IMG/VR virus record: IMGVR_UViG_3300037882_001770 | Location: 248,001-312,000 of that record | DNA length: 64,000 nucleotides | Reading direction: 5' to 3' (one strand) | In this document: piece after piece, positions 37,815 through 53,199 of the stretch | How the letters are laid out: each line of letters starts with the position of its first letter | Numbering within the stretch: position 1 is the stretch's first letter | Translations under genes and position numbers: made by a program | Notes under the pieces: model-generated | What the model saw: the letters and a program-made list of their open reading frames with translations, nothing else | What the model was told of the DNA's origin: nothing | Databases searched by the model: none

Positions 37815-38761
37815 AAGTTGTAGTTACTGGTGCGGCCGGGTACATTGGCGGAGAAACACTAATCAAGTTAGTCGATGCCGGACATGATGTACTGGCTATA
37901 GATCGTGTGATGCCACCAGGTAGTTTAATTTCGGTTCCTTGCCAATGGCACACTGGTGATTTTGCCAGTGAACTAGGAATAGACGCTATCAAGTTGTTTT
38001 GCCCTGATGCTATTATTCATTGTGCCGGTACTAGTTTGGTCGGACCAAGCCTAGAGCATCCAGAAGAATACTACAATAATAACTTTATTAAAACTAAAAT
38101 TCTATTAGACTATTTGGTCAAGAATCATGACAAACAAGTTAGATTTATTTTTAGTTCAAGTGCCGCAACCTACGGTAATCCCATCATGACTCCGGTTCAA
38201 GAAATTGATCCAACTGAGCCAATTAGTCCATACGGCCAAAGTAAGTTAATGATTGACTGGATGTTACAAAGTTATCAGCAAGCCTACGGATTAGACTTTG
38301 TGTCATTTCGTTACTTTAATGCTTGCGGTGCTGATAGTCAAGCCCGACACGGTCAGCCACCAGGAGCTACTCATATCATTGCTCGTGTGTTAGAATCAGT
38401 TAAAAATAACACTGACTTTACTTTGTATGGCACCGATTATCCCACTGATGATGGTACTTGTATTCGCGACTATATCCACGTGGAAGATCTAGCAGAAGCA
38501 CACATTATTGCTATAGACCAAACCATCCCCAGCGGTGTTTATAATCTCGGTACTAATGCCGGTAACAGTAATCTTGCAGTTGTACAATTAGCTTCGCAGA
38601 TAGTCAGCCGAGATATTCCGGTACTACACGGACCTCAACGAAAAGGTGATCCTGCTATCCTTACTGCTGATGCTAGCAAGTTTATGAGCGTGAGCTCTTG
38701 GGCTCCAAGATTTACGTTACATGATATTATTACCCACGCATGGGCCTGGTATAATAAATGA
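37811..38761 (+). CDS. galE: UDP-glucose 4-epimerase
   Basis: TGAAGYIG, FSSSAATYG, YGQSK, FRYFNACGA, DGTCIRDYIHV. Confidence 0.9.
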   Translation: MKVVVTGAAGYIGGETLIKLVDAGHDVLAIDRVMPPGSLISVPCQWHTGDFASELGIDAIKLFCPDAIIHCAGTSLVGPSLEHPEEYYNNNFIKTKILLDYLVKNHDKQVRFIFSSSAATYGNPIMTPVQEIDPTEPISPYGQSKLMIDWMLQSYQQAYGLDFVSFRYFNACGADSQARHGQPPGATHIIARVLESVKNNTDFTLYGTDYPTDDGTCIRDYIHVEDLAEAHIIAIDQTIPSGVYNLGTNAGNSNLAVVQLASQIVSRDIPVLHGPQRKGDPAILTADASKFMSVSSWAPRFTLHDIITHAWAWYNK

Positions 38762-39348
38762 GTTTCCAAGCATTATTTGATTTTGAATCTGCGCTAGCTG
38801 AATATACCGGCGCACCTTACGTAGTACTAACTGACGGTTGTACTCATGCTCTAGAACTTTGTTTTCGTTACGACAAAATCAAAGAAACTGCATTTACACC
38901 ATATACCTACTTGAGTGTCCCTATGCTTATGCATCACTTGGGGATCAAGTATGAATATCATAACCAAGAGCATAGACAAAAGTGGACAGGTGAATACAAG
39001 TTCGAATGTACACGTATCTGGGACTCGGCTCGTAGACTAGAACGCAACATGTACCACCCAGGACAAATGCAGTGCCTGAGTTTTGGATGGACCAAACCTC
39101 TACAACTGGGCAAGGTAGGCGCCATCCTTCTTGACGACGCAGAAGCACATCGCGTCATGAGTCGGCAACGGTCAGATGGTAGAGATCTACATGTGCCATG
39201 GGAAACCGAAACCGAATTGATCTTGGGTTATCACTATTGCCCCACTTTGGAACTATGCGTAAAGGGATTAGAATTATTACCCGTTATAGAACCCCGGTCA
39301 CAACCTGGCATTTATCCAGACTGTAGAAATATTTTGTTTACTACTTGA
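38758..39348 (+). CDS. Short DegT/DnrJ-like PLP aminotransferase
   Basis: GCTHALEL, WDSAR, SFGWTKPL (PLP lysine), GAIL; only 196 aa. Confidence 0.7.
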   Translation: MSFQALFDFESALAEYTGAPYVVLTDGCTHALELCFRYDKIKETAFTPYTYLSVPMLMHHLGIKYEYHNQEHRQKWTGEYKFECTRIWDSARRLERNMYHPGQMQCLSFGWTKPLQLGKVGAILLDDAEAHRVMSRQRSDGRDLHVPWETETELILGYHYCPTLELCVKGLELLPVIEPRSQPGIYPDCRNILFTT

Positions 39349-39425: not shown

Positions 39426-40256
39426 ATGCCTAAATATGTTTCACCTGAAGAACAAAAGATAGAAGATTTAAAATCACGAAAATATGCAGACGAAGCGCCG
39501 TATCATCCTGGCTACGAAGATGCGGCCTTGGGACCAATCGCATTCGACGAAGACAAAGACTACAAGGAAGCTAATCTAGCCGATGCCATTAGATTTAACA
39601 TGCGGCGCGATAAGAAACGTTTTTGGGCCGGTGATAACATTAGTGATTATCTGCACGAAGGCGATAAAGAACGCCTTATCAATGAAGCTACGGTGGCTTT
39701 TGAAAAAGTGTTAGATACCTTGTTGATTGATCGTGAAACAGACCCTAACAGCCGAGGCACAGCACGTAGACTGGCCAAGATGTATTTTAACGAAATTATG
39801 GAGGGTAGATATGCGCCAGCCCCAGATGCAACAGCTTTTCCGAATGATTCAGAAGACCGCTATGAAGGTATGTTGGTTGTTCGTAGTGAGTTACGAAGTA
39901 TATGCAGTCATCACCATCAGCCTGTCAGTGGTGTTGCTTATATTGGCATCATCGCCGCCAACAAACTTATCGGTCTTTCTAAGTATACTCGGATCGCTCA
40001 GTGGTGCGCTCGCCGTGGTACTCTACAAGAAGAATTATGTAACGACATTGCAAGAGAAATAATGCGAGCCACAGACTCAGAAAACGTGGGTGTGTATGTA
40101 CAGGCCACGCATGGGTGTTGTGAAAATCGTGGTATTATGGCACATTCCAGTCTAACACAGACTACCGTGCTTCGAGGTTCGTTCCAAACAGATCCCGGCA
40201 CTAAAAAAGAGTTCATGGACAATATCAAACTACAACAGGACTTTGCGCCAAGATGA
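39426..40256 (+). CDS. folE: GTP cyclohydrolase I
   Basis: SICSHHHQP, GLSKYTR, QEEL, HGCCENRG. Confidence 0.95.
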   Translation: MPKYVSPEEQKIEDLKSRKYADEAPYHPGYEDAALGPIAFDEDKDYKEANLADAIRFNMRRDKKRFWAGDNISDYLHEGDKERLINEATVAFEKVLDTLLIDRETDPNSRGTARRLAKMYFNEIMEGRYAPAPDATAFPNDSEDRYEGMLVVRSELRSICSHHHQPVSGVAYIGIIAANKLIGLSKYTRIAQWCARRGTLQEELCNDIAREIMRATDSENVGVYVQATHGCCENRGIMAHSSLTQTTVLRGSFQTDPGTKKEFMDNIKLQQDFAPR

Positions 40257-40907: not shown

Positions 40908-43418
40908 ATGAAGCGGAAATTGCTTTATACACTAATGTTCGGCTCAGTTATTGTGCTCACTGCCTGTGGGGGTGGAGGAGGGGGTGGAAGAGAGAGTGGA
41001 GGAGGAGGTGCTCCTGGTTCTCCACCGATCTATAATACTCCTAATCCATATCTCAGAGCCGAAGTCCCGTATTCTACCCCAGTGTTACAAGCAGTAGTAG
41101 ATCCATTGGTCAACGTGGCAGGTAATGGCTATAAATGGGCAGTAGCCGACACATTCTCGGCAGACATTGTCGGCACCGGTGGTCAAGATTTAATTGTTGC
41201 TGGTCGTATGACCCAACCGACTCCTATCGCAGAATGGGGCGACAATCGCATCAGCATGCTGAGCTGGCAAAACAATCAGCTGGTAGATAAAACAACGCAA
41301 TGGTTTCCAAATGATACCAATATTATATTAGGTACTGAGCCTAGTGTTAAATTTGCTGACTTTTTTAAAACAGGTCGCAATGACATGTTTGTATCAACCG
41401 GTACTGATATGCAACACTACGGTCCAACATATTTTTATCGCAATACCGGCACACAGTTCGAACGTCAACTATTAACCACAGCAAATATTTGGTCGCATGA
41501 TTCTGCAATCGGCGACCTTGACGGGGACGGGTACAAAGATATTGCTATTATTGACTACGGCACTAATACTACACTGGCCTTTAACAACCGAGTAAATGGA
41601 TTTAATGTATATACTCAAGCTCAAAACATAGTTAACGGTTACACCAACGTAGCCATCCATACCGGCAGTAGTATTGCTATTGGTAATTTTTTAGGCAACA
41701 GCCAAGGACAACTGATAGTAACTGATACTCCCGGTGCCAACAACAGTAGTCCTACAAAAATGTATTCTTGGGCGATCAATGCTCAAAATCAACTTAACTT
41801 TACAGAATTATCTACACTACCAACTCCTAGATTTGAACTGCCTAAATGGGCCGGGTATGGGTTTGCACCCGGAAGCCATAACGTTAGAGCAGTAACGTAC
41901 GATTTCAATGATGACGCCAAGCCCGATGTATTGATTTTCAGTCGACCTGGGCTTGGTACTGTAGATAACAAATGGAGCGAAATACAGTTCTTAAAAAATA
42001 GCGGAACTGGTGCATTTACTGATGTAACCGATGATACTCTAGTAGGTTATAATCATAGAACCTACACTACATATAATCCTAAATTTCTTGACTTAAACGG
42101 TGACGGGCGCGAAGACATCTTAGTATCCGGTGCAGATTTTACAGGGACTAACAATAGCACACAATTTTTATTAAAAAGTTCAGACGGCAAGTATGTGGCA
42201 GCATATCAAAACATTCTAACTGACTTTGCGACTCAGGCCAATTCAGTGCAAGGTGCCGACAACATGGGCAATACTGTAAATGTACTCAAAGCGCCCAATG
42301 GCAAACTATTTTTAGTTTCGGCAGTTAGTTTTATGAACAACGGCGATCGCCAACTTGCGGTGTACATGAGCGAACTTGGTAGTCAAAGTACTACAACTGC
42401 TCAAACAGCAATTAACTTAATTTTACAAAAATGGCCGTACATGACTGTGCCGGAGGCCAACGAAGTGTTGGCGCGAACTAGTGCTACATATTTTGGCGGA
42501 CGTGTAATTGATATAGATACTATGATGAATCCTGTTGGGTCATTAAGTATTCCTAACGCTAGAGGTTTGGCACCGATCAACGGATTTATTGCAGGAGTTA
42601 ATTTAGATTCTGGACAAGCGGTTGTACTTGATGAGCTTAAACGATCATACAGTATGAATATTCAGCCCATGAACATCATGCGTTTAAATGCGTTTCAAAT
42701 GAATATGGGACATAACGATCAACATAATCTTACTAGTCATGCTGAGTATCTGGTAAACGGACCTGTAATGACTTATGGTAACATTAGAGTCGGTAGCGAA
42801 AATCGAAACAACTTCACACACGGCGGTGCAAGCGACGGTCCAATGCTGGTTAATCAACAACTTACAAATTACACTCTTGGCCTTCCAAACATCTGGAGCA
42901 AAGGTAATTTTTCAGTTGGTACACAATATACTGTTCTTAATCAAAATCCGTGGCTTGCAATAGGCGGTGCTTGGGGCCAAATTACCAATTCAAACGTGCT
43001 TGATAATGTAGTAACCTATCGTAATAAAGGATTTAGTACGCAGGCTAGTTTGATGCACGTGACCACAAATATCACTCCCGGACTAGTAACCAATGTGAGC
43101 AACATGACTGGGGGATGGGCCGAAACCGGATATAGATATACTGACTGGAAAGGGCTTGGCGACATTGGCGTATATGCTGGTGTCAAACCGGTTGTGTTTT
43201 CGGGCAATGTTACAGCAAGAATTCCAACCAGTATTGACAACGCAGGCAACATAGTGTACACTAATAAAAACATGGCCATACAAAATCAAACCACTACATA
43301 TATCCGTGCTATGTACAGCAACATGCTAGACAAAAATACACAGTATCGAGTTAGTGGCATGGTGTTGTCAAGTGGTCAATATCGACTCATGTATGAACTT
43401 AGATGGTGGTTAGACTAA
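40908..43418 (+). CDS. Lipoprotein with FG-GAP/VCBS repeats and a beta-rich C-terminal domain
   Basis: Lipobox VLTAC plus poly-Gly; GDLDGDGYKD, DFNDDAKPD, DLNGDGRED repeats; aromatic C-terminus YELRWWLD. Confidence 0.75.
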   Translation: MKRKLLYTLMFGSVIVLTACGGGGGGGRESGGGGAPGSPPIYNTPNPYLRAEVPYSTPVLQAVVDPLVNVAGNGYKWAVADTFSADIVGTGGQDLIVAGRMTQPTPIAEWGDNRISMLSWQNNQLVDKTTQWFPNDTNIILGTEPSVKFADFFKTGRNDMFVSTGTDMQHYGPTYFYRNTGTQFERQLLTTANIWSHDSAIGDLDGDGYKDIAIIDYGTNTTLAFNNRVNGFNVYTQAQNIVNGYTNVAIHTGSSIAIGNFLGNSQGQLIVTDTPGANNSSPTKMYSWAINAQNQLNFTELSTLPTPRFELPKWAGYGFAPGSHNVRAVTYDFNDDAKPDVLIFSRPGLGTVDNKWSEIQFLKNSGTGAFTDVTDDTLVGYNHRTYTTYNPKFLDLNGDGREDILVSGADFTGTNNSTQFLLKSSDGKYVAAYQNILTDFATQANSVQGADNMGNTVNVLKAPNGKLFLVSAVSFMNNGDRQLAVYMSELGSQSTTTAQTAINLILQKWPYMTVPEANEVLARTSATYFGGRVIDIDTMMNPVGSLSIPNARGLAPINGFIAGVNLDSGQAVVLDELKRSYSMNIQPMNIMRLNAFQMNMGHNDQHNLTSHAEYLVNGPVMTYGNIRVGSENRNNFTHGGASDGPMLVNQQLTNYTLGLPNIWSKGNFSVGTQYTVLNQNPWLAIGGAWGQITNSNVLDNVVTYRNKGFSTQASLMHVTTNITPGLVTNVSNMTGGWAETGYRYTDWKGLGDIGVYAGVKPVVFSGNVTARIPTSIDNAGNIVYTNKNMAIQNQTTTYIRAMYSNMLDKNTQYRVSGMVLSSGQYRLMYELRWWLD

Positions 43419-43789
43419 TGGACTTAGAAGAAGCTCAACGATACGGAATAGCACCTTGGGACAACATACTCAAAGAAGACTTTCACGTGGTAGTGTATCT
43501 AGATCGATATCCTTGTACTGAAGGACATAGACTATATGTTCCTAGATACGACTCGGATATGTTGATGAATCAGTGCCTCACTGACGCTCTAAGAGATGGC
43601 CAGGCTATGGTTGCCGCAGGTGAGTGTGACGGATTCAACATTGGTATGAATTGGGGTACAGCCGCGGGGCAAACTGTGATGTGGCCACACATTCATCTTA
43701 TACCAAGAAGAAATGGTGATGTTGAAGATCCAGTGGGCGGAGTTAGAAATACCATACCCGGTAAAGGTAATTATAAAAAATGGAAGTAG
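43418..43789 (+). CDS. HIT-family nucleotide hydrolase
   Basis: GFNIGMN...AGQTVMWPHIHLIPR. Confidence 0.9.
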   Translation: MDLEEAQRYGIAPWDNILKEDFHVVVYLDRYPCTEGHRLYVPRYDSDMLMNQCLTDALRDGQAMVAAGECDGFNIGMNWGTAAGQTVMWPHIHLIPRRNGDVEDPVGGVRNTIPGKGNYKKWK

Positions 43790-44013: not shown

Positions 44014-44052
44014 TTTACAAATTCTGCCACCTATGCTATAATCTAACATAGG
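44014..44052 (+). promoter_or_regulatory. Sigma70-like promoter within an RBS-sequestering inverted repeat
   Basis: TTTACA-N17-TATAAT; CCTATG/CATAGG flanks the -10 and overlaps AGGAG. Confidence 0.55.
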
Positions 44053-44061
44053 AGAAATACA

Positions 44062-44586
44062 ATGGCAAAATATCTTTCAACAAAAACTTATGGTAACGAT
44101 CGCGGCTTGTCCTGCTGTTTCAGACAATGGCGCAGTACACACAGCCATTGCAGTTTGCTACATGGTTACTCAATTGGTATTAAACTGATCTTTGAAAGTG
44201 AAACTCTAGATGATCGTAACTGGGTCATGGACTTTGGCGGACTCAAAGCGTTCAAAGAATGGGCTGATTGGCAATTTGATCATACCATGTGTGTGGGGTC
44301 TGATGATCCCCATTTAGAAAAATTCAAAGCCCTAGCCGCACTAGGCAAACAGGCCGAAGGCGGCATAGTAGATCTGCGTATTGTAGAAGCGGTGGGCTGT
44401 GAAAAATTTGCAGAACTTGCTTATCGCACAATGCAACAAATATTAGCGGCATATCAAGAAGGTAGCAAGTGGCATCATCCTGACGGACGTGTATTTGAAG
44501 CACGTTACCCAGTTGAGATCGGTGTTAGACTGCGCTCAGCAGAAGTATTCGAACATGCCGGTAATAGTGCTATCTATGAAGGCTAA
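44062..44586 (+). CDS. queD: 6-carboxytetrahydropterin synthase
   Basis: HCSLLHGY, WVMDFGGLK, FDH, GCEKFAE. Confidence 0.9.
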   Translation: MAKYLSTKTYGNDRGLSCCFRQWRSTHSHCSLLHGYSIGIKLIFESETLDDRNWVMDFGGLKAFKEWADWQFDHTMCVGSDDPHLEKFKALAALGKQAEGGIVDLRIVEAVGCEKFAELAYRTMQQILAAYQEGSKWHHPDGRVFEARYPVEIGVRLRSAEVFEHAGNSAIYEG

Positions 44587-44615: not shown

Positions 44616-45509
44616 ATGACAAGACCGTTTAAAATTGCAGTATTGTTACCCACTCGTGGAAGGACTGATGCCTTGGCTCGTAGTATCATTAGCCTGTTTA
44701 ATCGAGCTGTGGACAAAAGCAGCATTCAGTTGATGATGATTTTTGATCACGACGACGATATAGGGTATGGATACTTTGAAAGAAAAATTCGGCCTTGGCT
44801 GGACGATCACGAAATCGACTATACTGCACTCGGAGTCGACAGCATGGGGTATGAGGGTCTTAATCGTTATTACAACACTATGGCAGAATCATGTGATGCT
44901 GATTGGTTTTTTATCTGGAACGATGATGCTATCATGGAAACTACTGGCTGGGATCAAATAATTACCAAAAACACAGGCGAATTTAAGCTGTTGGCTGTAC
45001 GCACACACAACGATCATCCTTACAGTATTTTTCCTATTATTCCTCGTGAGTGGTACGATCTATTTGGCTTGTTGAGCCGTCATCAGATGATCGACGCAGA
45101 GTTTAGTCAGCTTGCATACATGCTCAATATATTTGAACGAGTAGATATTTTTGTTACCCACGACCGTGCAGACCTCACCGGCAACAATGCCGACGAAACT
45201 GACAAAAAACGTGTGAGATTCGAGGGCAATCCAGAAAATCCGCATGACTTTCATCACACTCTCTACTCTAAGCAACGTCTTGTTGACGCAGAAACCATAG
45301 CACAATATATGAAGTCAATTGGCATGGACGTAGAATTTTGGACCAATGTCAAGGCTGGCAAACAGTATCCATGGGAACAACTGATCAAAAATGACACTAA
45401 CAAACAGATGAGACAATTTGGCGTAACAGTAGATCCTGTCACAAACAAAGTGGTTGCTATCAAACCAGACGATCATGCAAACATAGTAAGGCAACAAAAT
45501 GAATCTTGA
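44616..45509 (+). CDS. GT-A glycosyltransferase (GT2-like)
   Basis: LLPTRGR, FDHDD, FFIWNDD. Confidence 0.8.
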   Translation: MTRPFKIAVLLPTRGRTDALARSIISLFNRAVDKSSIQLMMIFDHDDDIGYGYFERKIRPWLDDHEIDYTALGVDSMGYEGLNRYYNTMAESCDADWFFIWNDDAIMETTGWDQIITKNTGEFKLLAVRTHNDHPYSIFPIIPREWYDLFGLLSRHQMIDAEFSQLAYMLNIFERVDIFVTHDRADLTGNNADETDKKRVRFEGNPENPHDFHHTLYSKQRLVDAETIAQYMKSIGMDVEFWTNVKAGKQYPWEQLIKNDTNKQMRQFGVTVDPVTNKVVAIKPDDHANIVRQQNES

Positions 45510-46734
45510 TATCATTACCAGTAAAAAAATTGATCAGTGCTTGATTACCAGTTTGCCAGTTACTAAAGTTTTAGATTTTGGTCAGCATTCTTATGCTGAT
45601 ACTTTTATTAGCCAAGATCAATATCATCTCAGCGAGCCAGTGTTTCCTTTACAGGTCATGCTGTGTCCAGATTCAGGCATGATACAGTTAGGATATGTCA
45701 GCAACGCCGAAGCAAGATATAATTTATACAGCTACAGTTACACTTCCAGTAATAGCAAAACTGCAAGAGATCATTGGGATCGTTATGCCGCCACTATTAA
45801 AAATACCTACGGGGTCAACGGACTAGTTGTTGAGATTGGCAGCAATGACGGATATCTAATTGGACAGTTTAATGGCGAAGCTACCACAGCACTTGGAGTT
45901 GACAGTAGCAAAGAAATGTGTCGTCTTGCCAAGAACAAAGGAGTCGAAACAGTACACGGATTATTTGATTTCGGTACTGCCCAGTCTCTAAAAAACACAC
46001 ATGGCACAGCAAAAATTATTATGGCCAATAATGTGTTTAATCATGCCAACGACCCGCTGGCATTTGCCAAAGCAGTTGGCGAATTGTTAGACCCAGAGTC
46101 AGGTGTATTTGTATTCGAAGTGCCATACTGGCTCAGTATGGTCCAAAGTGGCCGCTTTACAGATATGGTCTATCACGAACATCCTAGCTATTTTACAGTA
46201 AAGAGTCTTTGGAATTTGCTTAAAATTGCAGGGCTAGAAATTACAGATTATCAAATAGTAGACTACCATGGCGGAAGTCTGAGAGTACATGCTCGTTGTG
46301 ATACTGGTGCAGACATGCCAGACTTGATTACCCATGCAATACTTCAAGAACACGTAGCTGGAATATTCCTGCCAGAGTTTTATCAAAATCTTCAAAGAAA
46401 ATTTGAATTGCAACGAGCTGAATGGTTGTATAATTTTAATCAGATTTACATGACCGATCCCGATGCTGTGTTTATTGGCATTGGTGCAGCCGCAAAAGCA
46501 AACACCTGGCTAACCTGGCACGGCCTCAATGCTACCCACTTGCATTGTATTACCGACGCTAGCGAATACAAGCAAGGCAAATACACCCCGCTGAGTAGAA
46601 TTCCTATTTTAGGCGACAACGAGTTTGCCAATCATCCGGCTCCGTATGCGTTGATTTTAAGTTGGAATATTAGCGAAGGCCTCAAGAAATCCATACTAAA
46701 TATCAACCCCAACACAAGGTTTATTTCACAATGA
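45499..46734 (+). CDS. NDP-sugar C-methyltransferase-like protein
   Basis: VEIGSNDG, ANNVFNH, YHEHPSYF, HGGSLR, GAAAKANT, LILSWN. Confidence 0.85.
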   Translation: MNLDIITSKKIDQCLITSLPVTKVLDFGQHSYADTFISQDQYHLSEPVFPLQVMLCPDSGMIQLGYVSNAEARYNLYSYSYTSSNSKTARDHWDRYAATIKNTYGVNGLVVEIGSNDGYLIGQFNGEATTALGVDSSKEMCRLAKNKGVETVHGLFDFGTAQSLKNTHGTAKIIMANNVFNHANDPLAFAKAVGELLDPESGVFVFEVPYWLSMVQSGRFTDMVYHEHPSYFTVKSLWNLLKIAGLEITDYQIVDYHGGSLRVHARCDTGADMPDLITHAILQEHVAGIFLPEFYQNLQRKFELQRAEWLYNFNQIYMTDPDAVFIGIGAAAKANTWLTWHGLNATHLHCITDASEYKQGKYTPLSRIPILGDNEFANHPAPYALILSWNISEGLKKSILNINPNTRFISQ

Positions 46735-47138
46735 AACACTACAATATTCACAGCAACCAAGAGCCTGGTCTAGGTGTACATCAAGACGATCGCGGTACCA
46801 TTGCAGATATTTTTTATAAATTAAATGTAAATCACGGTTGTTTAATCAGCAATGCTCCCGGAGCAGTGCGTGGCAATCATTATCACAAATTAACAACACA
46901 GTACACCTTTATTGTAGCCGGCAGTTTGGAATACTATAGCAAATCTGTCGACAGTGACAAGCCAGCTCAAGTGCTATCAGCAAAGGGCGGGGATTTTATT
47001 ATTAGCGAACCAAACGAGATCCATGCACTCCGCGCTGGCGCACAAGGGTGTGTGTTTATAGCATTTGCTGAAGGCCCTCGTGGTGGTGAAGACTACGAAA
47101 ATGACACATTTCGAGTAGACTCAATTATTCCACAATGA
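46731..47138 (+). CDS. Cupin (sugar epimerase/isomerase-like)
   Basis: DDRG, RGNHYH, PNEIH. Confidence 0.8.
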   Translation: MKHYNIHSNQEPGLGVHQDDRGTIADIFYKLNVNHGCLISNAPGAVRGNHYHKLTTQYTFIVAGSLEYYSKSVDSDKPAQVLSAKGGDFIISEPNEIHALRAGAQGCVFIAFAEGPRGGEDYENDTFRVDSIIPQ

Positions 47139-47728
47139 AAAAAACTGTAGCGATTTTTGGAGCAAGTGGCGGCATTGGACGAGCTGTTAGGCAAGCCTTC
47201 CTGGATGCCGAATACACAGTTATTCCGGTCAGTCGTACCTTGATTGATTTTGCCGGTACTGATGCTGAACGTCAAATACAAGAATTTTTAAGTTTATCCA
47301 CACCGGATGTAGTGGTCAACTGCGTTGGAAAGTTTAGCAACAATGACGAGCCAGCCGGCCCACTCATGAACATAAACTTCAACAGCAATTGGGCAATAGT
47401 TCAACACTATTTAAAAAATCCACAGCCGGTTAGGGTTATTATTGTTGGGTCAAGTGCATACAAATCTGGCAGAAAAGATTACATGGTGTACAGCGCCAGC
47501 AAGGCTGCCCTATACAACCTATGGCAAGGTGCAAGAGATACGTTTGCTGAAACCGAAGTACGAGTCGACTTAGTTAATCCTGTAAGAACTCGTACCAAAA
47601 TGGTTGAACCATTTAACACAGAACTAGATTATCTGGAGCCACAAGAAGTTGCAAAATGTATTTTACAATTGGATCAATGGAACGATCCCAGCAGATGCGT
47701 AGACATAACTTTTAAGGATGCAAAATGA
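47135..47728 (+). CDS. Short-chain dehydrogenase/reductase
   Basis: GASGGIG, VVVNCVG, YSASK. Confidence 0.9.
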   Translation: MKKTVAIFGASGGIGRAVRQAFLDAEYTVIPVSRTLIDFAGTDAERQIQEFLSLSTPDVVVNCVGKFSNNDEPAGPLMNINFNSNWAIVQHYLKNPQPVRVIIVGSSAYKSGRKDYMVYSASKAALYNLWQGARDTFAETEVRVDLVNPVRTRTKMVEPFNTELDYLEPQEVAKCILQLDQWNDPSRCVDITFKDAK

Positions 47729-48498
47729 AAATAGGATTATTAGGACGCGGTACTGTAGGCAAAGCTGTCTATGAAGGGCTGGAATATCTAGGCCACGAAA
47801 TGAGTTTCTTTGACCCAGCCTACGAAGGCTCACACATTGAGGACGTGCTGTCAACTGACTGTGTGTTTATTTGTGTACCGACTGATCAGGCAGCCAACGG
47901 CGACTGTGATACCAGTATTGTAGACCGTGTGGTCAAAGATCTTGCTGAACGCAATTATACTGGATTGGTATCTATTAAAAGCACAGTAGTTCCTGGGACC
48001 ACCGAGCGTCTACAAAAAACCTACCCTGAGTTAAGATTAAGCATGGTTCCAGAATTTTTACGTGCTAAAAGTGCATTGGCTGATTTTGTATACAATCATG
48101 ACCTATTAGTTGTGGGCTGTAACAACAAAGAGGATGCGGAACTTCTAGTAGAAATCCACGGAAGTTTTCCTGAAAACATTGCTCGTGTAAGTCCTACTGA
48201 AGCCGAAGTGATCAAATATTTTAACAACGTACATCATGCTATGAGTGTGACCTTTGCCAACATCACATATGATGTATGCGACAAGCTAGGCGCCAACTAT
48301 ATGAATGTGTACAAGGCCATTACCAAACGTGAATGCATCAATCCTCATTACCTAATGGCCAATCCGAACATGCGAGGATACGGCGGGCATTGTTTGCCAA
48401 AAGATACCAGCGCATGGAACAACTTGATTCAAAATTTAGGATTAGACTTTGGATTAATTCAAGCAGTAATCAACGACAACGAGAAATTTAACAAATGA
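47725..48498 (+). CDS. UDP-glucose/GDP-mannose 6-dehydrogenase family, lacking the C-terminal domain
   Basis: GRGTVG, FICVPT, IKSTVVPGT, PEFL, AEVIKY, GYGGHCLPKD. Confidence 0.85.
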   Translation: MKIGLLGRGTVGKAVYEGLEYLGHEMSFFDPAYEGSHIEDVLSTDCVFICVPTDQAANGDCDTSIVDRVVKDLAERNYTGLVSIKSTVVPGTTERLQKTYPELRLSMVPEFLRAKSALADFVYNHDLLVVGCNNKEDAELLVEIHGSFPENIARVSPTEAEVIKYFNNVHHAMSVTFANITYDVCDKLGANYMNVYKAITKRECINPHYLMANPNMRGYGGHCLPKDTSAWNNLIQNLGLDFGLIQAVINDNEKFNK

Positions 48499-49406
48499 AA
48501 ATACTAGTAACCGGTGCCAGCGGCTTGTTGGGCACAGAAATCTGCCGCCAACTCAAACAAAACAAAAAAAATGTAGTATGGGCCATGGACAATCATTCCA
48601 GAAGCGAAAGCATTCCGCCCTGTGATAAGTTTATCGAAGTAGACCTAACCGCTGGCGATGTCGCGTATGCAGAGTTACCTATAGACTTTGATTATATCTA
48701 TCACTATGGTGCAATCAACGGTACTAAAAACTTTTACGAACGCCCAAATCAAGTATTATGGAACAACATGATTGGCGACTTCAATGTTTTTGAGTTTGCA
48801 GGCATGAATAAAAAACTAAAGAAACTAGTGTATGCTTCTAGTAGTGAAGTAGTCAGCGATGATCCAAAAAGCCCTGTACCAGAAAATACAAATATCACAA
48901 TCAACAATATTCACAACGCTAGATGGAGTTATAGACTGCCAAAGATATGTGCCGAGAATTACCTGGCCAACAGCAATTTGCCATATGTCATGATTCGATA
49001 TTTTAATGTGTACGGTGACAACAGCAAAGCAGGGCATTTTTTAGCAGACCAAATTGAGAAAATTCAAAACGGTGTATTCGAAATTATCGGGCCCAAAGAA
49101 ACTCGTAGTTTTTGTCACGTGGAAGACGCAGTAAGGGCTACAATTTTCTGCGCAGAGAACGCAAATCGCGAACTGTTTAACATTGGCAATGATCGAGAAA
49201 TCACTATCAAAGATGCTGCCCAAATTATTGCAGCTGAACTTGGACATGCTTCGCCTAAATGGAAAACCACTCCAGGTAAAGCCGGTAGTACACCAAACCG
49301 CAGACCAAACATCAACAAGCTCAAAAAGCTCATGAAGGATTACAAGCCCATGACATTTGAACAAGGCATCAAACAAATCATTGCCAATCGCGTTGACAAA
49401 AAGTAA
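48495..49406 (+). CDS. NAD-dependent epimerase/dehydratase (UDP-glucuronate decarboxylase-like)
   Basis: TGASGLLG, ASSSEV, RWSYRLPK, RYFNVYG, TRSFCHV. Confidence 0.85.
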   Translation: MKILVTGASGLLGTEICRQLKQNKKNVVWAMDNHSRSESIPPCDKFIEVDLTAGDVAYAELPIDFDYIYHYGAINGTKNFYERPNQVLWNNMIGDFNVFEFAGMNKKLKKLVYASSSEVVSDDPKSPVPENTNITINNIHNARWSYRLPKICAENYLANSNLPYVMIRYFNVYGDNSKAGHFLADQIEKIQNGVFEIIGPKETRSFCHVEDAVRATIFCAENANRELFNIGNDREITIKDAAQIIAAELGHASPKWKTTPGKAGSTPNRRPNINKLKKLMKDYKPMTFEQGIKQIIANRVDKK

Positions 49407-49422
49407 GTGCGTAGTGTATAAT
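49393..49422 (+). promoter_or_regulatory. Sigma70-like promoter
   Basis: TTGACA-N18-TATAAT. Confidence 0.6.
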
Positions 49423-49427: not shown

Positions 49428-49961
49428 ATGAAAAAAATATATTATACCTGGCAAGATGTTGAGAAACAAACCCAAGAAATTCTACGCCAACTTCAGCGCG
49501 ATGCATGGATGCCCGACTATGTAGTAGGACTCACTCGTGGTGGACTAGTACCAGCTAATTTGATTAGTCAATACCTCGAGGTTCCAATGGAAACACTTAA
49601 GGTTAGTTTGCGTGATGATAACTCGCAACCAGAAAGTAATTTATGGATGGCCGAAGATGCTTACGGGTATACCATCCATGATCCTATGTGTAACGGTGAT
49701 GGCCGTAAGAATATTCTTATTGTAGACGATATCAATGATTCGGGTGCTACACTTAACTGGATCAAACAAGACTGGATGAGCAGTTGCATGCCAGTTGACA
49801 GCCGTTGGGATCATGTATGGAGCAATAATGTTCGTGTAGCTGTGCTAGTGGATAACGAAGCAAGCACCAGTGAATTAAATGTTAGTTATTCAGCTGTCGA
49901 CCTAAATAAGGCTGAAGAAGATTCGTGGATTGTTTTTCCTTGGGAAGATTGGTGGAAATAA
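49428..49961 (+). CDS. Type I phosphoribosyltransferase (Gpt-like)
   Basis: VGLTRGGL, ILIVDDINDSGATL, WIVFPWE. Confidence 0.9.
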   Translation: MKKIYYTWQDVEKQTQEILRQLQRDAWMPDYVVGLTRGGLVPANLISQYLEVPMETLKVSLRDDNSQPESNLWMAEDAYGYTIHDPMCNGDGRKNILIVDDINDSGATLNWIKQDWMSSCMPVDSRWDHVWSNNVRVAVLVDNEASTSELNVSYSAVDLNKAEEDSWIVFPWEDWWK

Positions 49962-49965
49962 ATTT

Positions 49966-50597: not shown

Positions 50598-51455
50598 ATG
50601 AAAATTAAAGTCAGCGAAATATTTTACAGTCTACAAGGCGAAGGTCGTTTTGTAGGAGTGCCCAGCGTATTCTTACGCACTTATGGTTGTAACTTTACCT
50701 GTTCAGGGTTTGGTTGCAAACCAGGAGAAAAGAGTGCAGGTGCAGACGAAGTTGCTAAAACAGTAGAGCTGTACAAAACATTTAACGACTTGCCTTTGGT
50801 AGAAACAGGGTGTGACAGCTATGCATCATGGCATCCTGCCTACAAGCACCTAAGTCCTACACAGACCACAGAAGAATTGGTAGAACGCATGCTGGCCCTA
50901 ACCCCTAACAATGCATGGCAACAAAACAACGGCAATGACGTACACTTGGTCATCACCGGCGGCGAACCCTTGTTAGGGTGGCAACGTGCTTACAAAGAGT
51001 TGTTAGAGCATCCACGCATGGCAGACTTAAAAAACATCACGTTTGAAACCAACGGAACTCAGGAACTACATGAAGATTTTAAATTGTACTTGGATTACTG
51101 GGCCTGCGACGGTGGAAGAGAAGTTACGTTCAGTGTAAGTGCCAAGCTGAGTGCCAGTGGCGAGAAGTGGGAGGAAGCTATTCGTCCAGAAATTGTCAAC
51201 AGTTATGAAGCTTACGGACATACATATCTTAAGTTTGTAGTAGAAACCGATGATCATATTCGTGATGCTATTCGTGCCACTGATGAATTTCGTGCCGGTG
51301 GATTTCAAGGAGTAATTTACTTGATGCCGCAGGGCGGCGTGGTCGAACCATACGATCGGAACAAGTTGCGCATTGCCAATATCTGCTGTGAACAAGGGTG
51401 GAACTACAGCCCTAGATTACACGTGGATCTCTGGGGCAACGGCTGGGGAAAGTAA
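50598..51455 (+). CDS. queE: 7-carboxy-7-deazaguanine synthase (radical SAM)
   Basis: EIFYSLQGEG, FLRTYGCNFTC...GCDS, ITGGEP, FETNG, PRLH. Confidence 0.93.
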   Translation: MKIKVSEIFYSLQGEGRFVGVPSVFLRTYGCNFTCSGFGCKPGEKSAGADEVAKTVELYKTFNDLPLVETGCDSYASWHPAYKHLSPTQTTEELVERMLALTPNNAWQQNNGNDVHLVITGGEPLLGWQRAYKELLEHPRMADLKNITFETNGTQELHEDFKLYLDYWACDGGREVTFSVSAKLSASGEKWEEAIRPEIVNSYEAYGHTYLKFVVETDDHIRDAIRATDEFRAGGFQGVIYLMPQGGVVEPYDRNKLRIANICCEQGWNYSPRLHVDLWGNGWGK

Positions 51456-52094: not shown

Positions 52095-52726
52095 TTTTTT
52101 CAGAAGACAGCATGATATTTGTGGGGTGTAGTTATACCAGCGGAGTGGGGCTGGAGAATCGTCGAGACTGCTATAGCACTGTCATGTGCGATCGATTAAA
52201 CAAAAAAGAATTTAATTTTGCATATGGTGGTGCCAACAACTACAGTAGTTTTGACAAAATTTCAAAATTAAACTTGGCGGAAAACACCTCATTGGTTTTA
52301 CAAATAACACAGTTGGGTAGAATAAAATATTATGATTACGATCATCAAGCTATAAAAGATAGAGTTTTTTCTAGCCAGCCAGATCGCACATTGATGAGTG
52401 TATACCCTGACGAGTTTTTGATTTATGAATTAAATCGTTACCTTGAACTGGTCACACGATACACAAGAGCTGCCAAAATAAAGTTAATTATTTGGAGCAT
52501 AGCTGATTCATTTGACAACCGGATACATCATATGGTTTCTGACTGTGTGTCTCAATTTCAAGAATACGTCTATTTAGAAAGCAAGTTAGATTCACCTGGT
52601 TGTTATCGGGTTGACAACGGTACTGACGGCGTTGGAAAATCAATTGGATCAGGGCATCCTGGTCCCAAATCACATCAGTTAATCGCAGACAAGTTGATCT
52701 CTCATTATAAGGATTTATATTCATGA
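52091..52726 (+). CDS. SGNH-hydrolase-like protein
   Basis: VGCSYT, GGANN, GHPGPKSH. Confidence 0.55.
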   Translation: MIFSEDSMIFVGCSYTSGVGLENRRDCYSTVMCDRLNKKEFNFAYGGANNYSSFDKISKLNLAENTSLVLQITQLGRIKYYDYDHQAIKDRVFSSQPDRTLMSVYPDEFLIYELNRYLELVTRYTRAAKIKLIIWSIADSFDNRIHHMVSDCVSQFQEYVYLESKLDSPGCYRVDNGTDGVGKSIGSGHPGPKSHQLIADKLISHYKDLYS

Positions 52727-53199
52727 TATTCAATCACATTAAAAAACTCAAACATGACGGTAAAAAAATTGGTATTACTTTCAGCACCTTTGACATGTTG
52801 CATGCCGGTCATATTGCCATGCTGAGCGAAGCAAAGAATCATTGCGATTACTTGATTTGTGGATTACAAACAGATCCAACACTAGATCGGCCTGATACCA
52901 AAAATCAGCCCGTGCAAAGCATTGTAGAACGACAGATACAACTGGCCGCATGTAGGTATGTGGACGAAGTAGTTGTTTATCAAACAGAACGAGATCTGCG
53001 TGACCTACTGCTGATCCTGCCCGTGGATGTGCGTATCTTAGGTGTGGAGTATGAAGACAAGGATTATAGCGGAAGACAAGAATGCTACTCACGCGATATA
53101 GAAATTATATTCAATAGTAGAGATCATTCATTCAGCTCCAGCAGTTTGCGGAAACGTGTTGCCGAATTAGAAACGATCAAGGCGCTTAAACAGCAATGA
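52723..53199 (+). CDS. Cytidylyltransferase (TagD/RfaE-like)
   Basis: STFDMLHAGH, ERQIQL, SSSSLRKR. Confidence 0.9.
   Translation: MIFNHIKKLKHDGKKIGITFSTFDMLHAGHIAMLSEAKNHCDYLICGLQTDPTLDRPDTKNQPVQSIVERQIQLAACRYVDEVVVYQTERDLRDLLLILPVDVRILGVEYEDKDYSGRQECYSRDIEIIFNSRDHSFSSSSLRKRVAELETIKALKQQ

What the first reader, a model, noticed from the sequence alone, without database searches (positions are those of the whole stretch)
44616..49406. Six-gene branched-sugar pathway inserted between queD and the PRTase/queE genes
An overlapping operon encodes a GT-A, an NDP-sugar C-methyltransferase, a cupin, an SDR, a UDP-sugar 6-dehydrogenase and a decarboxylase-like epimerase. By known chemistry, 6-oxidation, decarboxylation to a 4-keto-pentose, C-methylation and reduction would give a C-methyl-branched pentose for the GT to transfer. 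Such sugars are typical of antibiotics and O-antigens, not phages. The target is unknown: DNA base, virion protein or host surface.
Basis: partly seen in the sequence, partly recalled or inferred. Interest (0 to 1): 0.65.

Follow-up and report, generated by a model that had tools for sequence, protein, structure and literature searches.

The report
Swappable rare-sugar cassette in jumbo phage
A freshwater jumbo phage carries a glycosyltransferase plus a five-enzyme pathway that probably makes a C-methyl-branched sugar; in related phages the same position holds at least ten different sugar pathways, and what the sugar is attached to is still unknown.

Summary
They are a GT-A glycosyltransferase (shown by fold), a TylC3/MtmC-type sugar C-methyltransferase, a metal-type cupin, a short classical SDR, a UDP-sugar 6-dehydrogenase and a UXS-like extended SDR.

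- **Truncated dehydrogenase.** It is 257 aa, keeps its catalytic residues and lacks the UDP-binding C-terminal domain. It is 257-258 aa in all 63 relatives.
- **Host genome.** The window is part of a 317-kb uncultured jumbo phage whose DNA polymerase resembles that of Atu_ph07/Rak2-like phages.
- **Not a recent insertion.** The cassette recurs in more than 60 related viral contigs at 60-70% identity and has the composition of the genome.
- **Variable slot.** In relatives, the position behind the conserved GT-A, between queD and PRTase/queE, holds at least ten different sugar cassettes. A sister clade has none.
- **Independent of que genes.** One subclade keeps GT-A and the cassette without que genes. 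A 96%-complete phage carries the five biosynthetic genes without QueE or GT-A.
- **Bacterial counterparts.** Bacteria have CMT-cupin-SDR and UGDH-UXS-like-CMT-cupin operons (best 57%), which supports the proposed chemistry.
- **Surrounding island.** It has FolE, QueD, QueE and a DpdL homologue, but no QueC and no recognisable DpdA.

The acceptor is unresolved.

The parts
44014..44042 (+). sigma-70-like promoter match (11 of 12, with TG) just upstream of queD; possible start of a queD + six-gene transcription unit
   Evidence: This is a consensus match only. The region as a whole is not enriched in promoter-like sites (55 found, 48 +/- 7 in shuffles). The four best + strand sites all lie in intergenic gaps before FolE, the FG-GAP gene, QueD and PRTase.
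44062..44586 (+). QueD-like 6-carboxytetrahydropterin synthase; ends 29 nt before the glycosyltransferase gene
   Evidence: Pfam PTPS 1.6e-12. PHROG 2389 6.5e-32. phmmer to phiST QueD 6.5e-29.
44616..45509 (+). soluble GT-A fold glycosyltransferase; head of the variable slot
   Evidence: No Pfam or NCBIfam hit. PHROG 14945 3.5e-7. Model pLDDT 89.8. Foldseek top hits TarP, RmlT, SpsA, TarS. Invariant D103-D104. Family pI 4.8-5.9 and no hydrophobic segment.
45499..46734 (+). SAM-dependent NDP-4-keto-sugar C-methyltransferase (TylC3/MtmC/TcaB9 type)
   Evidence: Pfam PF08421, PF13489 and PF08484. PDB 4rv9 4.1e-56 over residues 20-395, and TcaB9 8e-34.
46731..47138 (+). small cupin, probably a keto-sugar epimerase or isomerase; always follows the CMT gene
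   Evidence: Weak Cupin_2 hit. Profile search hits metal cupins, the Cap5F cupin domain at 7e-4 and FdtA/QdtA at 0.04-0.07. H50, H52, Q57 and H98 are invariant. Paired with CMT in about 55 cellular loci.
47135..47728 (+). short classical SDR (197 aa), probably the ketoreductase
   Evidence: adh_short 1.7e-17. Glycine-rich motif and invariant Y119xxxK123. A 188-197 aa homologue follows CMT-cupin in Polynucleobacter, Sediminibacterium and an acI actinobacterium.
47725..48498 (+). truncated NDP-sugar 6-dehydrogenase (257 aa) with no UDP-binding C-terminal domain
   Evidence: Pfam PF03721 (positions 74-187) and PF00984 only. TIGR03026 scores 155 bits, below the 189.8 cut-off. Catalytic E-F-L-R, K..N and G-G-H-C-L-P-K-D motifs are invariant. 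It is 257-258 aa in 63 loci. 758 homologues; the best 120 are 242-268 aa. It ends at about residue 316 of a 427-aa bacterial counterpart. No C-terminal domain is found elsewhere in the genome.
48495..49406 (+). UXS/ArnA-like extended SDR, the probable source of the 4-keto sugar
   Evidence: Epimerase family 5.6e-38. Family profile against PDB: 8vr2 5e-42, human UXS1 4e-41. S115-S116-S117-E118, Y146, K150 and R269 are invariant, also in the bacterial homologues.
49393..49422 (+). perfect sigma-70 consensus match (12 of 12) before the PRTase gene; likely start of the next unit
49428..49961 (+). xanthine/guanine-type phosphoribosyltransferase
   Evidence: Pfam Pribosyltran 3.5e-17. NCBIfam PRK09177 8.7e-14, below its cut-off. 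Present in 36 of the 66 loci found with CMT and in most loci found with QueE. Retained with the cassette in the subclade that lacks que genes.
50598..51455 (+). QueE-like radical SAM enzyme (7-carboxy-7-deazaguanine synthase)
   Evidence: PHROG 2076 1.8e-53. 47% identical to the QueE of Synechococcus phage BUCT-ZZ01.
35913..36377 (+). homologue of phiST DpdL, the proposed CDG decarboxylase
   Evidence: phmmer 5.2e-13 to phiST CGPG_00067. Both fall in PHROG 17812 (2.1e-34 for this ORF; 3.9e-69 for phiST).
36465..37814 (+). GT-B (GT4-like) glycosyltransferase; the real start is probably near 36576-36612
   Evidence: ESM Atlas neighbours carry Glycos_transf_1. The model is poor overall (pLDDT 59), yet Foldseek's top hits are BshA, LmbT, PimA and MshA. 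80-87% identical in relatives.
37739..38761 (+). UDP-glucose 4-epimerase GalE
   Evidence: TIGR01179 scores 293 bits, above the 262.3 cut-off.
38758..39348 (+). shortened DegT-like protein (196 aa)
   Evidence: Pfam DegT 2.5e-9 in two short stretches. It is 176-224 aa in more than 30 loci.
39426..40256 (+). GTP cyclohydrolase I (FolE)
   Evidence: Pfam 1.1e-38. 35% identical to phiST FolE.
43403..43789 (+). HIT-family nucleotide hydrolase or transferase
   Evidence: Pfam HIT 3.4e-8. Conserved before QueD in most loci.
52723..53199 (+). cytidylyl/adenylyl-transferase-like protein (RfaE domain II-like)
   Evidence: Pfam CTP_transf_like 6e-13. PHROG 7878 1.8e-32. TIGR02199 1.9e-21, below its cut-off.

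Best explanation
The six genes are a glycosyltransferase plus a self-contained five-enzyme nucleotide-sugar pathway. Together they form one old allele of a swappable sugar-cassette slot in a lineage of freshwater jumbo phages.

**Proposed route (inferred from homology and gene order)**
1. A UDP-hexose from the host, interconverted by the phage GalE, is oxidised at C6 by the truncated dehydrogenase.
2. The UXS/ArnA-like SDR oxidises C4 and decarboxylates it to a UDP-4-keto-pentose.
3. The TylC3/MtmC-type enzyme adds a methyl group on a carbon next to the keto group.
4. The cupin epimerises or isomerises the keto-sugar.
5. The short SDR reduces the keto group.
6. The soluble GT-A transfers the finished C-methyl-branched sugar.

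**Shown:** the genes, the families, the fold, the conserved catalytic residues, the conservation of the cassette and the variability of the slot.

**Inferred:** substrates, order of steps, product and acceptor.

GT-A plus the cassette, and the cassette alone, both persist in relatives without que genes. The acceptor is therefore probably not the deazaguanine product itself. It is more likely a macromolecule that every member of the lineage makes. My first choice is a phage (virion) protein glycan that diversifies between clades, as in giant viruses and mycobacteriophages. Phage DNA and the host envelope are close rivals.
For: **Gene reality and families:**

**GT-A:** fold and DD motif.

**UXS-like signature:** profile rank and invariant residues.

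**Dehydrogenase:** catalytic residues intact and truncation conserved.

**Same enzyme sets in bacteria:**
- Full-length UGDH, SDRe-like, CMT and cupin in four verrucomicrobial loci.
- CMT, cupin, short SDR and an extended SDR in Polynucleobacter, Sediminibacterium and an acI actinobacterium.

**Parallel with mycarose genes (established knowledge):** TylC3 (methylation), TylK (epimerisation) and TylC2 (4-ketoreduction).

**Slot variability:**
- 79 loci have GT-A and a downstream QueE.
- Alternative cassettes include a dehydratase, DegT, a split ThDP enzyme and methyltransferases (L120); UDP-galactopyranose mutase (L102); and sets of methyltransferases and SDRs (L108).
- Closely related GT-A genes carry different cassettes, while all window-type cassettes sit in one GT-A clade with 99% support.

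**Independence from que genes:**

**No route to hydroxymethyl-pyrimidines:** no ThyA-family gene in this genome or in two nearly complete relatives.

**No recognisable DpdA:**

**GT-A properties:** acidic and without membrane segments.
Against: - No substrate, product or acceptor was measured.
- The dehydrogenase lacks the domain that normally holds UDP. It may not act on a UDP-sugar at all, for example it could act on a sugar that is already attached.
- UXS-type enzymes normally reduce their own 4-keto intermediate. Release of a 4-keto-pentose is assumed, not shown.
- The SDR also scores close to 4-epimerases.
- The site of methylation (C3 or C5) cannot be read from sequence.
- The cassette appears to be co-transcribed with queD.
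- Sugar genes are interleaved with deazaguanine genes at two places. This argues for a functional link that my preferred acceptor ignores.
- No structural gene or glycosylation motif links the cassette to the virion.
- The phage genes that flank the island on both sides are a DNA polymerase and an exonuclease.
Confidence: 0.4

Rival explanations
1. The sugar ends up on the 7-deazaguanine product. The island (DpdL, GT-B, GalE, FolE, HIT, QueD, GT-A + cassette, PRTase, QueE) would be one system. It would make a glycosylated 7-deazapurine, either as a hypermodified DNA base or at the nucleotide level before replication.
For: - QueD lies 29 nt upstream of GT-A, behind a shared promoter-like site.
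- GT-A follows QueD in nearly all que-positive loci, whatever cassette comes next.
- GT-B, GalE and the short DegT sit between DpdL and FolE, also in the sister clade that lacks GT-A.
- FolE, QueD, QueE and DpdL match the phiST set, which gives dDG in DNA (PMC10516641).
- PRTase and, in relatives, a small MazG-like gene next to QueE suggest chemistry at the nucleotide level.
- Natural products such as huimycin show that glycosyltransferases can glycosylate a 7-deazaguanine base (PMC7439116; bioRxiv 10.64898/2026.04.15.718813).
Against: - GT-A, the cassette and PRTase persist where DpdL, GT-B, GalE, FolE, HIT, QueD and QueE are gone from the region (L028, L030, L033, L034, L043).
- G002 (96% complete) has the cassette but no QueE and no GT-A.
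- No DpdA of any described subfamily was found.
- If DpdL decarboxylates CDG, the base has no obvious group to carry a sugar.
- No glycosylated deazaguanine in DNA has been reported in the papers read.
Confidence: 0.22
2. The cassette remodels the host envelope during infection. It would add the rare sugar to lipopolysaccharide, capsule or another wall polymer, for example to block superinfection or to keep progeny from sticking to debris.
For: - The nearest cellular relatives sit in bacterial and archaeal glycan-type gene neighbourhoods. The best is a Polynucleobacter isolate (57% CMT, 49% cupin, 36% SDR).
- The best structural matches of GT-A are wall-teichoic-acid glycosyltransferases, including TarP. 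That TarP is prophage-encoded is my own recollection.
- Cassette diversity resembles the diversity of O-antigen loci.
Against: - No flippase, polymerase, lipid-carrier transferase or membrane segment lies in the island.
- The phage looks lytic and T4-like.
- The structural matches are at fold level only (TM about 0.46-0.55).
- The host is unknown.
Confidence: 0.2
3. The pathway makes an ordinary sugar, such as UDP-xylose, UDP-arabinose or UDP-galacturonate. Alternatively, methylation at C5 of the 4-keto-pentose simply rebuilds a 6-deoxyhexose. The 'branched pentose' would then be an over-reading.
For: - The SDR scores almost equally with UXS, 4-epimerases and 3,5-epimerases.
- UXS enzymes normally finish to UDP-xylose.
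- C5-methylating members of the TylC3 family exist (NovU/CloU type; my own recollection).
Against: - A full-length, three-domain C-methyltransferase with the family's conserved architecture is kept in every copy.
- It is always followed by the cupin.
- Keeping five enzymes to make a sugar the host already supplies is unlikely.
Confidence: 0.12
4. The sugars decorate a small molecule that is not a nucleic-acid base, such as a pterin glycoside made from the FolE/QueD-type products. This is what cyanobacteria do with biopterin.
For: - FolE, two PTPS-fold proteins (QueD, DpdL), GalE, a uronate-forming dehydrogenase, a methyltransferase and two glycosyltransferases lie together.
- A UDP-glucose:tetrahydrobiopterin glucosyltransferase is among the GT-B structural matches, at rank 42.
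Against: - QueE commits the pathway to deazapurines.
- The structural match is generic for GT4.
- The same independence of cassette and que genes applies.
- No known benefit to a phage.
Confidence: 0.06

Closest known systems
Branched deoxysugar pathways of antibiotics (TylC3-TylK-TylC2 of mycarose; MtmC, PDB 4rv9; TcaB9, PDB 3ndi)
   Same: A three-domain SAM-dependent C-methyltransferase aligns end to end with the solved enzymes. It is followed by an epimerase-type cupin and a ketoreductase-type SDR. The logic is the same: methylate next to a 4-keto group, epimerise, reduce.
   Different: - The cupin here is not an RmlC/TylK-family member (no Pfam dTDP_sugar_isom or FdtA hit).
- The keto-sugar appears to come from a uronate decarboxylase rather than a 4,6-dehydratase.
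- The nucleotide carrier is probably UDP, not dTDP.
- The host is a phage.
Ugd + ArnA/UXS (UDP-glucuronate to UDP-4-keto-pentose or UDP-xylose)
   Same: A dehydrogenase with the catalytic cysteine motif sits directly upstream of an extended SDR with the Ser-Glu / YxxxK / Arg signature. The SDR's profile ranks human UXS1 second.
   Different: - The dehydrogenase has lost the UDP-binding domain and part of the N-terminal domain.
- Neither protein reaches any NCBIfam equivalog cut-off.
- Downstream use by a C-methyltransferase has no characterised precedent that I could find.
Bacterial UGDH-SDR-CMT-cupin and CMT-cupin-SDR operons (uncharacterised; Verrucomicrobia, Polynucleobacter and others)
   Same: Same gene families in the same order, at 25-57% identity.
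   Different: - The bacterial dehydrogenase is full length (394-427 aa).
- No GT-A of this family lies beside the bacterial operons.
- Their products are also unknown.
Clade-specific glycosylation gene clusters of giant viruses and virion glycosylation in mycobacteriophages (from my own knowledge, not tested here)
   Same: Virus-encoded soluble glycosyltransferases plus complete rare-sugar pathways, with the content differing between related clades.
   Different: - No link to virion proteins has been shown here.
- The cluster lies among replication genes and deazaguanine genes.
7-Deazaguanine DNA modification of Cellulophaga phage phiST (FolE, QueD, QueE, DpdL, DpdA3; PMC10516641)
   Same: FolE, QueD, QueE and DpdL homologues are present and QueC is absent.
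   Different: - No DpdA3 or any other DpdA was detected.
- This island also has a PRTase, HIT, two glycosyltransferases and sugar pathways interleaved with the que genes.
Sugar modification of hydroxymethyl-pyrimidines in T-even phage DNA
   Same: A T4-like replication background. Phage glycosyltransferases use host UDP-sugars, and the sugar differs between relatives.
   Different: No ThyA-family hydroxymethylase is present to create the acceptor hydroxyl. The GT-A family is unrelated by sequence to anything in cultured phages except a weak hit in pelagiphage HTVC008M.

Membership tests
Sugar C-methyltransferases (TylC3/TcaB9/MtmC) | N-terminal zinc-binding domain (PF08421) | tested here: met
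   3.5e-11 over residues 21-74.
Sugar C-methyltransferases (TylC3/TcaB9/MtmC) | Central SAM-binding Rossmann domain and C-terminal domain PF08484, aligned end to end with solved members | tested here: met
   PF13489 6.2e-14 and PF08484 2.3e-23. 4rv9 aligns over residues 20-395 at 4.1e-56.
Sugar C-methyltransferases (TylC3/TcaB9/MtmC) | C-methylation of an NDP-4-keto-sugar | not testable with these tools
   Needs an enzyme assay.
UDP-glucose/GDP-mannose dehydrogenase family | Central domain with catalytic Cys plus Lys/Asn/Glu residues | tested here: met
   PF00984 5.4e-21. Motifs are invariant in 47 sequences.
UDP-glucose/GDP-mannose dehydrogenase family | C-terminal UDP-sugar-binding domain (PF03720) | tested here: not met
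   Absent from the protein. It ends at about residue 316 of a 427-aa homologue. None is found elsewhere in the genome except a 17-bit match in an unrelated 420-aa ORF.
UDP-glucose/GDP-mannose dehydrogenase family | Curated NCBIfam score (TIGR03026) | tested here: not met
   155.3 bits against a cut-off of 189.8.
UDP-glucuronate decarboxylases (UXS/ArnA type extended SDR) | Glycine-rich NAD motif, Ser/Thr-Glu pair and YxxxK | tested here: met
   T-G-A-S-G-L-L-G, S117-E118 and Y146/K150 are invariant.
UDP-glucuronate decarboxylases (UXS/ArnA type extended SDR) | Closer to decarboxylases than to epimerases or dehydratases | tested here: inconclusive
   Family profile: unnamed 8vr2 at 5e-42, UXS1 at 4e-41, epimerases at 1e-38 to 1e-33. 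The single sequence ranks epimerases first. NCBIfam PRK11908 scores 44 bits against a cut-off of 294.
GT-A fold glycosyltransferases (GT2-like) | GT-A Rossmann-like fold | tested here: met
   Model pLDDT 89.8. Foldseek probability 1.00 to TarP, RmlT, SpsA and TarS.
GT-A fold glycosyltransferases (GT2-like) | Metal-binding DxD-type motif | tested here: met
   D103-D104 are invariant in 36 sequences. That this pair corresponds to the family's DxD motif is inferred, not checked by superposition.
GT-A fold glycosyltransferases (GT2-like) | Match to a curated sequence family (Pfam Glycos_transf_2 or similar) | tested here: not met
   No Pfam or NCBIfam hit. Only PHROG 14945 at 3.5e-7.
Phage 7-deazaguanine DNA modification systems (as defined in PMC10516641) | FolE, QueD and QueE | tested here: met
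Phage 7-deazaguanine DNA modification systems (as defined in PMC10516641) | A DpdA transglycosylase (DpdA1-4 or bacterial DpdA) | tested here: not met
   - PF01702 is absent from this record and from a 100%-complete relative.
- The phiST DpdA3 PHROGs are absent.
- DUF6610 is absent.
- hhalign of neighbouring families against phiST DpdA3 gives probabilities under 1%.
- A very divergent DpdA cannot be excluded.
Recently captured host O-antigen-type locus | Deviant base composition or near-identical cellular homologues | tested here: not met
   GC is 0.42-0.43 against a window range of 0.38-0.47. The best cellular CMT is 57-58% identical. The 68% hit, L159, is a phage contig binned into a MAG.
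FdtA/QdtA 3,4-ketoisomerases | Sequence membership | tested here: inconclusive
   No Pfam FdtA hit. Profile E-values are 0.04-0.07 to FdtA/QdtA and 7e-4 to the Cap5F cupin domain.

The most novel reading that the evidence does not exclude
The whole island would be a DpdA-independent way of putting a 7-deazaguanine into phage DNA. It would work at the nucleotide level: base, then PRTase, then nucleotide, with MazG-like and HIT enzymes clearing competing nucleotides. The glycosyltransferases would then decorate the base with clade-specific rare sugars. This would be the first glycosylated purine in DNA, and its sugar would diversify as the hydroxymethylcytosine sugars of T-even phages do.
Probability: 0.1. 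Interest if true: 0.9.

Novelty: new variant of a known kind. Interest (0 to 1): 0.62.

Why it matters
- **A variable sugar locus in a phage.** A stable position where one conserved glycosyltransferase is followed by at least ten alternative rare-sugar pathways would be a viral counterpart of O-antigen-type diversity. Such a pattern usually marks a molecule under attack by the other side, through host defences or receptor recognition.
- **A minimal dehydrogenase.** The 257-aa form is conserved in hundreds of environmental sequences. It asks how a uronate-forming enzyme holds its substrate without the UDP-binding domain.
- **Deazaguanine without DpdA.** The island has FolE, QueD, QueE and DpdL but no detectable DpdA, in a 100%-complete relative too, and has a PRTase instead. 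This bears on whether all phage 7-deazaguanine DNA is made after replication.
- **Possible new sugars.** The predicted C-methyl-pentose, and the ThDP-dependent branched sugars of sister cassettes, may be new, and their enzymes are compact.

Tried and rejected
- **Recent capture from a host.** Rejected. GC matches the genome. Divergence within the lineage is 60-70%. The best cellular identity is 57%. All window-type cassettes sit in one deep GT-A clade.
- **Close cultured relatives.** None. DNA search of 50,697 phage records matched only a short queD piece. CMT matched 9 records at 24-29%. GT-A matched only pelagiphage HTVC008M.
- **DpdA hunt.** Nothing from PF01702, the DpdA3 PHROGs, DUF6610, phmmer with phiST DpdA3, or hhalign of 11 neighbouring families.
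- **Missing dehydrogenase domain encoded elsewhere.** Not found.
- **Hydroxymethyl-pyrimidine route for DNA glycosylation.** No ThyA-family gene; ThyX only.
- **tRNA-queuosine idea.** The genome has no tRNA genes, no TGT and no QueC. Dropped.
- **Unknown slot family f5 and the two L063 ORFs upstream of CMT.**
  - No PDB sequence match.
  - No relation to GT-A.
  - For one L063 ORF, only an ESM Atlas lead to giant-virus hypothetical proteins.
- **GT-B model.** Low confidence (pLDDT 59), so its matches are supportive only.
- **Sequencing runs.** One freshwater metagenome holds 5% of the sampled words. I did not lay reads because nothing could be learned from them.
- **Not used.** The large representative-protein search and complex prediction; no claim here depends on them. 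No other genetic code was needed.

Full report
**What is there.** The window is bases 248001-312000 of a 317,493-bp IMG/VR virus record estimated 89% complete. All larger ORFs run on the + strand. There are no tRNA genes in the window or the genome. The family B DNA polymerase at 28388-31045 is 42-50% identical to those of Atu_ph07, Phosso and Rak2-like jumbo myoviruses. This is therefore an uncultured jumbo phage with a T4-like replication core. The only sequencing run found to hold any of the stretch is labelled a freshwater metagenome, and it holds just 5% of the sampled words.

**The observation.** Six ORFs lie at exactly the stated coordinates and overlap by 11, 4, 4, 4 and 4 nt.
- **ORF 2** has the three domains of sugar C-methyltransferases. 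It aligns over nearly its whole length with MtmC (4rv9, 4e-56), TcaB9 and a further solved sugar 3-C-methyltransferase (5t64).
- **ORF 3** is a small cupin.
- **ORF 4** is a short classical SDR with a glycine-rich motif and YxxxK.
- **ORF 5** belongs to the UDP-glucose/GDP-mannose dehydrogenases.
- **ORF 6** is an extended SDR.
- **ORF 1** has no Pfam or NCBIfam match. An alignment of 36 homologues shows an invariant DD pair. The AlphaFold model (pLDDT 89.8) matches the GT-A enzymes TarP, RmlT, SpsA and TarS.

- *The dehydrogenase is a conserved minimal form.*
  - It is 257 aa, with its own glycine-rich start, a shortened NAD domain and the central domain. The catalytic cysteine loop and the Glu/Lys/Asn residues are intact.
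  - The C-terminal UDP-binding domain is absent.
  - It is 257-258 aa in all 63 related loci.
  - It has 758 homologues at E <= 1e-10, of which the best 120 are 242-268 aa.
  - Its motifs are invariant.
  - No separate C-terminal domain is encoded elsewhere in the genome.
- *ORF 6 carries the signature of enzymes that work through a 4-keto intermediate.*
  - It has the Ser-Glu pair, YxxxK and a conserved Arg. These are also invariant in bacterial homologues only 31-32% identical to it.
  - A family profile places human UDP-glucuronate decarboxylase second (4e-41), behind an unnamed entry.
  - With the single sequence, epimerases rank first. The decarboxylase assignment is likely but not proven.

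**Conservation.**
- A scan of viral contigs with the methyltransferase gave 66 loci at 44-71% identity. In most of them the order is FolE, HIT, QueD, [GT-A, CMT, cupin, SDR, dehydrogenase, SDR], (PRTase), QueE, g126, (nucleotidyltransferase), g233, exonuclease.
- The cassette has the base composition of the rest of the window.
- The best + strand promoter-like sites lie just before FolE, the FG-GAP gene, QueD and PRTase. QueD and the six genes therefore look like one transcription unit. This rests on consensus matches only.

**The slot is variable.** A second scan with QueE brought 80 further loci. Together the two sets show four situations.
- **(a) No cassette.** A sister clade has PRTase, QueD and QueE adjacent, with no GT-A and no cassette. 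It still has DpdL, GT-B, GalE, the short DegT and FolE upstream.
- **(b) The window's arrangement.**
- **(c) Other cassettes.** QueD and GT-A are followed by other gene sets of 2.5-8 kb.
  - L120 has a dehydratase-type SDR, two methyltransferases, a DegT aminotransferase, a class I/II aminotransferase, a split ThDP enzyme, an FkbM methyltransferase and another SDR.
  - L102 has UDP-galactopyranose mutase.
  - L108 has methyltransferases and SDRs.
- **(d) No que genes.** A subclade (L028, L030, L033, L034, L043) keeps GT-A, the cassette and PRTase. It has lost DpdL, GT-B, GalE, FolE, HIT, QueD and QueE from the region.

I clustered the slot ORFs of the 79 loci that have both GT-A and a downstream QueE. 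This gives the window type plus at least ten other architectures.

On a GT-A tree, all window-type cassettes fall in one clade of 41 rows with 99% support. Elsewhere, closely related GT-A genes carry different cassettes (L143/L145, L135/L102, L127/L137). The tree needs 14 changes of cassette type, against 23.5 for shuffled labels.

G002, a 161-kb phage estimated 96% complete, carries the five biosynthetic genes at 48-65% identity. It has no QueE and no member of the GT-A family. Two paralogous unknown ORFs precede its cassette.

**Cellular counterparts.** A scan of one genome per prokaryotic species found 71 loci. One of them (L159, labelled a Haliscomenobacter MAG) is simply a contig of this phage lineage.
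- In the others, CMT and the cupin are almost always adjacent.
- A short SDR and an extended SDR follow in a Polynucleobacter isolate (57/49/36% identity), in Sediminibacterium and in an acI actinobacterium.
- Four verrucomicrobial loci have a full-length dehydrogenase (394-427 aa where ORFs were listed, L201 and L210), an ORF 6-like SDR, CMT and the cupin in that order.

This is the best available support for the chemistry. It also shows that the phage cassette is a relative of cellular glycan modules, though not a recent copy.

**The surrounding island.**
- Upstream lie a homologue of phiST DpdL, a GT-B glycosyltransferase, GalE above its curated cut-off, a 196-aa DegT-like protein, FolE and a HIT protein.
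- Downstream lie an XGPRT-like PRTase, QueE and a nucleotidyltransferase.
- QueC is absent.
- No DpdA was found by any route, including in a 100%-complete relative.
- In phiST the same FolE/QueD/QueE/DpdL set goes with complete replacement of dG by 7-deazaguanine and with DpdA3 (PMC10516641).
- Many relatives have a small MazG-like gene before QueE or after QueD.
- No ThyA-family hydroxymethylase exists in this genome or in two nearly complete relatives.

**Most likely mechanism.**
- *Donor side, confidence about 0.6.* A UDP-hexose is oxidised to the uronate, then oxidatively decarboxylated to a 4-keto-pentose. It is C-methylated next to the keto group, epimerised or isomerised by the cupin, and reduced by the short SDR. 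This parallels TylC3, TylK and TylC2 of mycarose biosynthesis.
- *GT-A.* It co-diverges with the cassette type, which fits its being the transferase for the product.
- *Variable slot, confidence about 0.85.*
- *Acceptor, inferred only.* The cassette works without que genes in some phages, and no base with a hydroxyl handle can be made. I therefore put a phage protein glycan first (about 0.35-0.4). Next come a deazaguanine-linked or DNA target (about 0.2-0.25), the host envelope (about 0.2) and a small-molecule glycoside (under 0.1).
- *Evidence against my first choice.* The apparent co-transcription with queD and the double interleaving of sugar genes with deazaguanine genes are real evidence against it.

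**Comparison with known systems.** The enzymes belong to known superfamilies, and the logic is that of branched-sugar pathways of antibiotics and surface glycans. Four things are new:
- the phage setting;
- the minimal dehydrogenase;
- the possible use of a uronate-derived keto-pentose as methyl acceptor;
- the cassette slot behind a conserved GT-A inside a deazaguanine island that lacks DpdA.

I class this as a new variant of a known kind.

**Limits.**
- All function is inferred from sequence, fold and gene order.
- All relatives are metagenomic contigs, many of them fragments. Absences are firm only for the two records estimated at least 96% complete.
- The promoter calls are consensus matches.
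- The GT-B model is poor.
- The large representative-protein search, complex prediction and read laying were not used.

Noticed in passing
window 35913-36377, 39426-40256, 44062-44586, 49428-49961, 50598-51455: The phage has FolE, QueD, QueE and a homologue of the proposed CDG decarboxylase DpdL. It has no QueC and no detectable DpdA of any subfamily. The same holds for a 100%-complete relative (G004). An XGPRT-like PRTase sits beside QueE. This raises the possibility of a nucleotide-level route to 7-deazaguanine DNA.
   Followed up: partly
window 47725-48498: A 257-aa dehydrogenase without the UDP-binding domain forms a large environmental family. There are 758 homologues, and the best 120 are 242-268 aa, on contigs up to 347 kb. 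How it binds its substrate is unexplained.
   Followed up: partly
window 38758-39348: A DegT-like protein of only 196 aa matches the family in two short stretches. It is conserved at 176-224 aa in more than 30 relatives. It is probably not a normal aminotransferase.
   Followed up: no
window 36465-38761: A GT-B glycosyltransferase (80-87% identical in relatives, much more conserved than GT-A) and GalE sit between DpdL and FolE. This is also true in the sister clade that lacks GT-A and the cassette.
   Followed up: partly
L120:408-9247; L102:6923-9449; L108:1343-6058: Alternative cassettes in the same slot include a split ThDP-dependent enzyme with two aminotransferases and three methyltransferases, UDP-galactopyranose mutase, and sets of methyltransferases and SDRs. 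A recurrent unknown family of about 240 aa (f5) has no match anywhere.
   Followed up: partly
L050:8821-9105 (G004:188509-188658) and homologues in L085, L097, L100, L128, L158 and others: A small MazG-like ORF (90-110 aa) lies just before QueE, or between QueD and GT-A, in many relatives. It is absent from the window, where an unrelated 206-aa ORF (49930-50550) takes that place.
   Followed up: partly
G000:9413-12441 (outside the window; L078:3414-6442): ThyX is followed by a second extended SDR (323 aa) and a full-length DegT aminotransferase (376 aa). Together they look like a separate amino-sugar pair. A radical SAM/SPASM protein lies at G000:17895-19067 on the - strand.
   Followed up: no
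L159 (NZ_JBBAKG010000058.1): A 39-kb contig filed in a Haliscomenobacter MAG has the full phage synteny, from GT-B to the exonuclease. It is either a mis-binned phage contig or a hint at the host.
   Followed up: no
L160 (Polynucleobacter sp. 73C-SIWE, 1.2-Mb contig) 7592-11144: This is the closest cellular relative of the CMT-cupin-SDR module (57/49/36% identity). It lies in the chromosome of a freshwater isolate, which could be the donor lineage or a host.
   Followed up: no
window 40908-43418: An 836-aa FG-GAP repeat protein lies inside the island between FolE and HIT. A homologue is detected in only 5 of the first 66 loci and about a dozen of the 80 later ones, at 23-63% identity.
   Followed up: no
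related loci, gaps of about 1.2-2.5 kb between otherwise adjacent genes (e.g. L003 QueE-g126, L018 cupin-SDR, L040 GT-CMT): Frequent extra insertions occur between conserved genes of the island. They may be homing endonucleases or other selfish genes. I did not examine them.
   Followed up: no
window 49393-49422: A perfect TTGACA-18-TATAAT match overlaps the last bases of the SDR gene, six bases before the PRTase start codon.
   Followed up: no
L063:8083-10001: In the que-less phage G002, two paralogous unknown ORFs (338 and 292 aa) precede the cassette. Their ESM Atlas neighbours are giant-virus hypothetical proteins (DUF7796). They may be a different transferase.
   Followed up: partly
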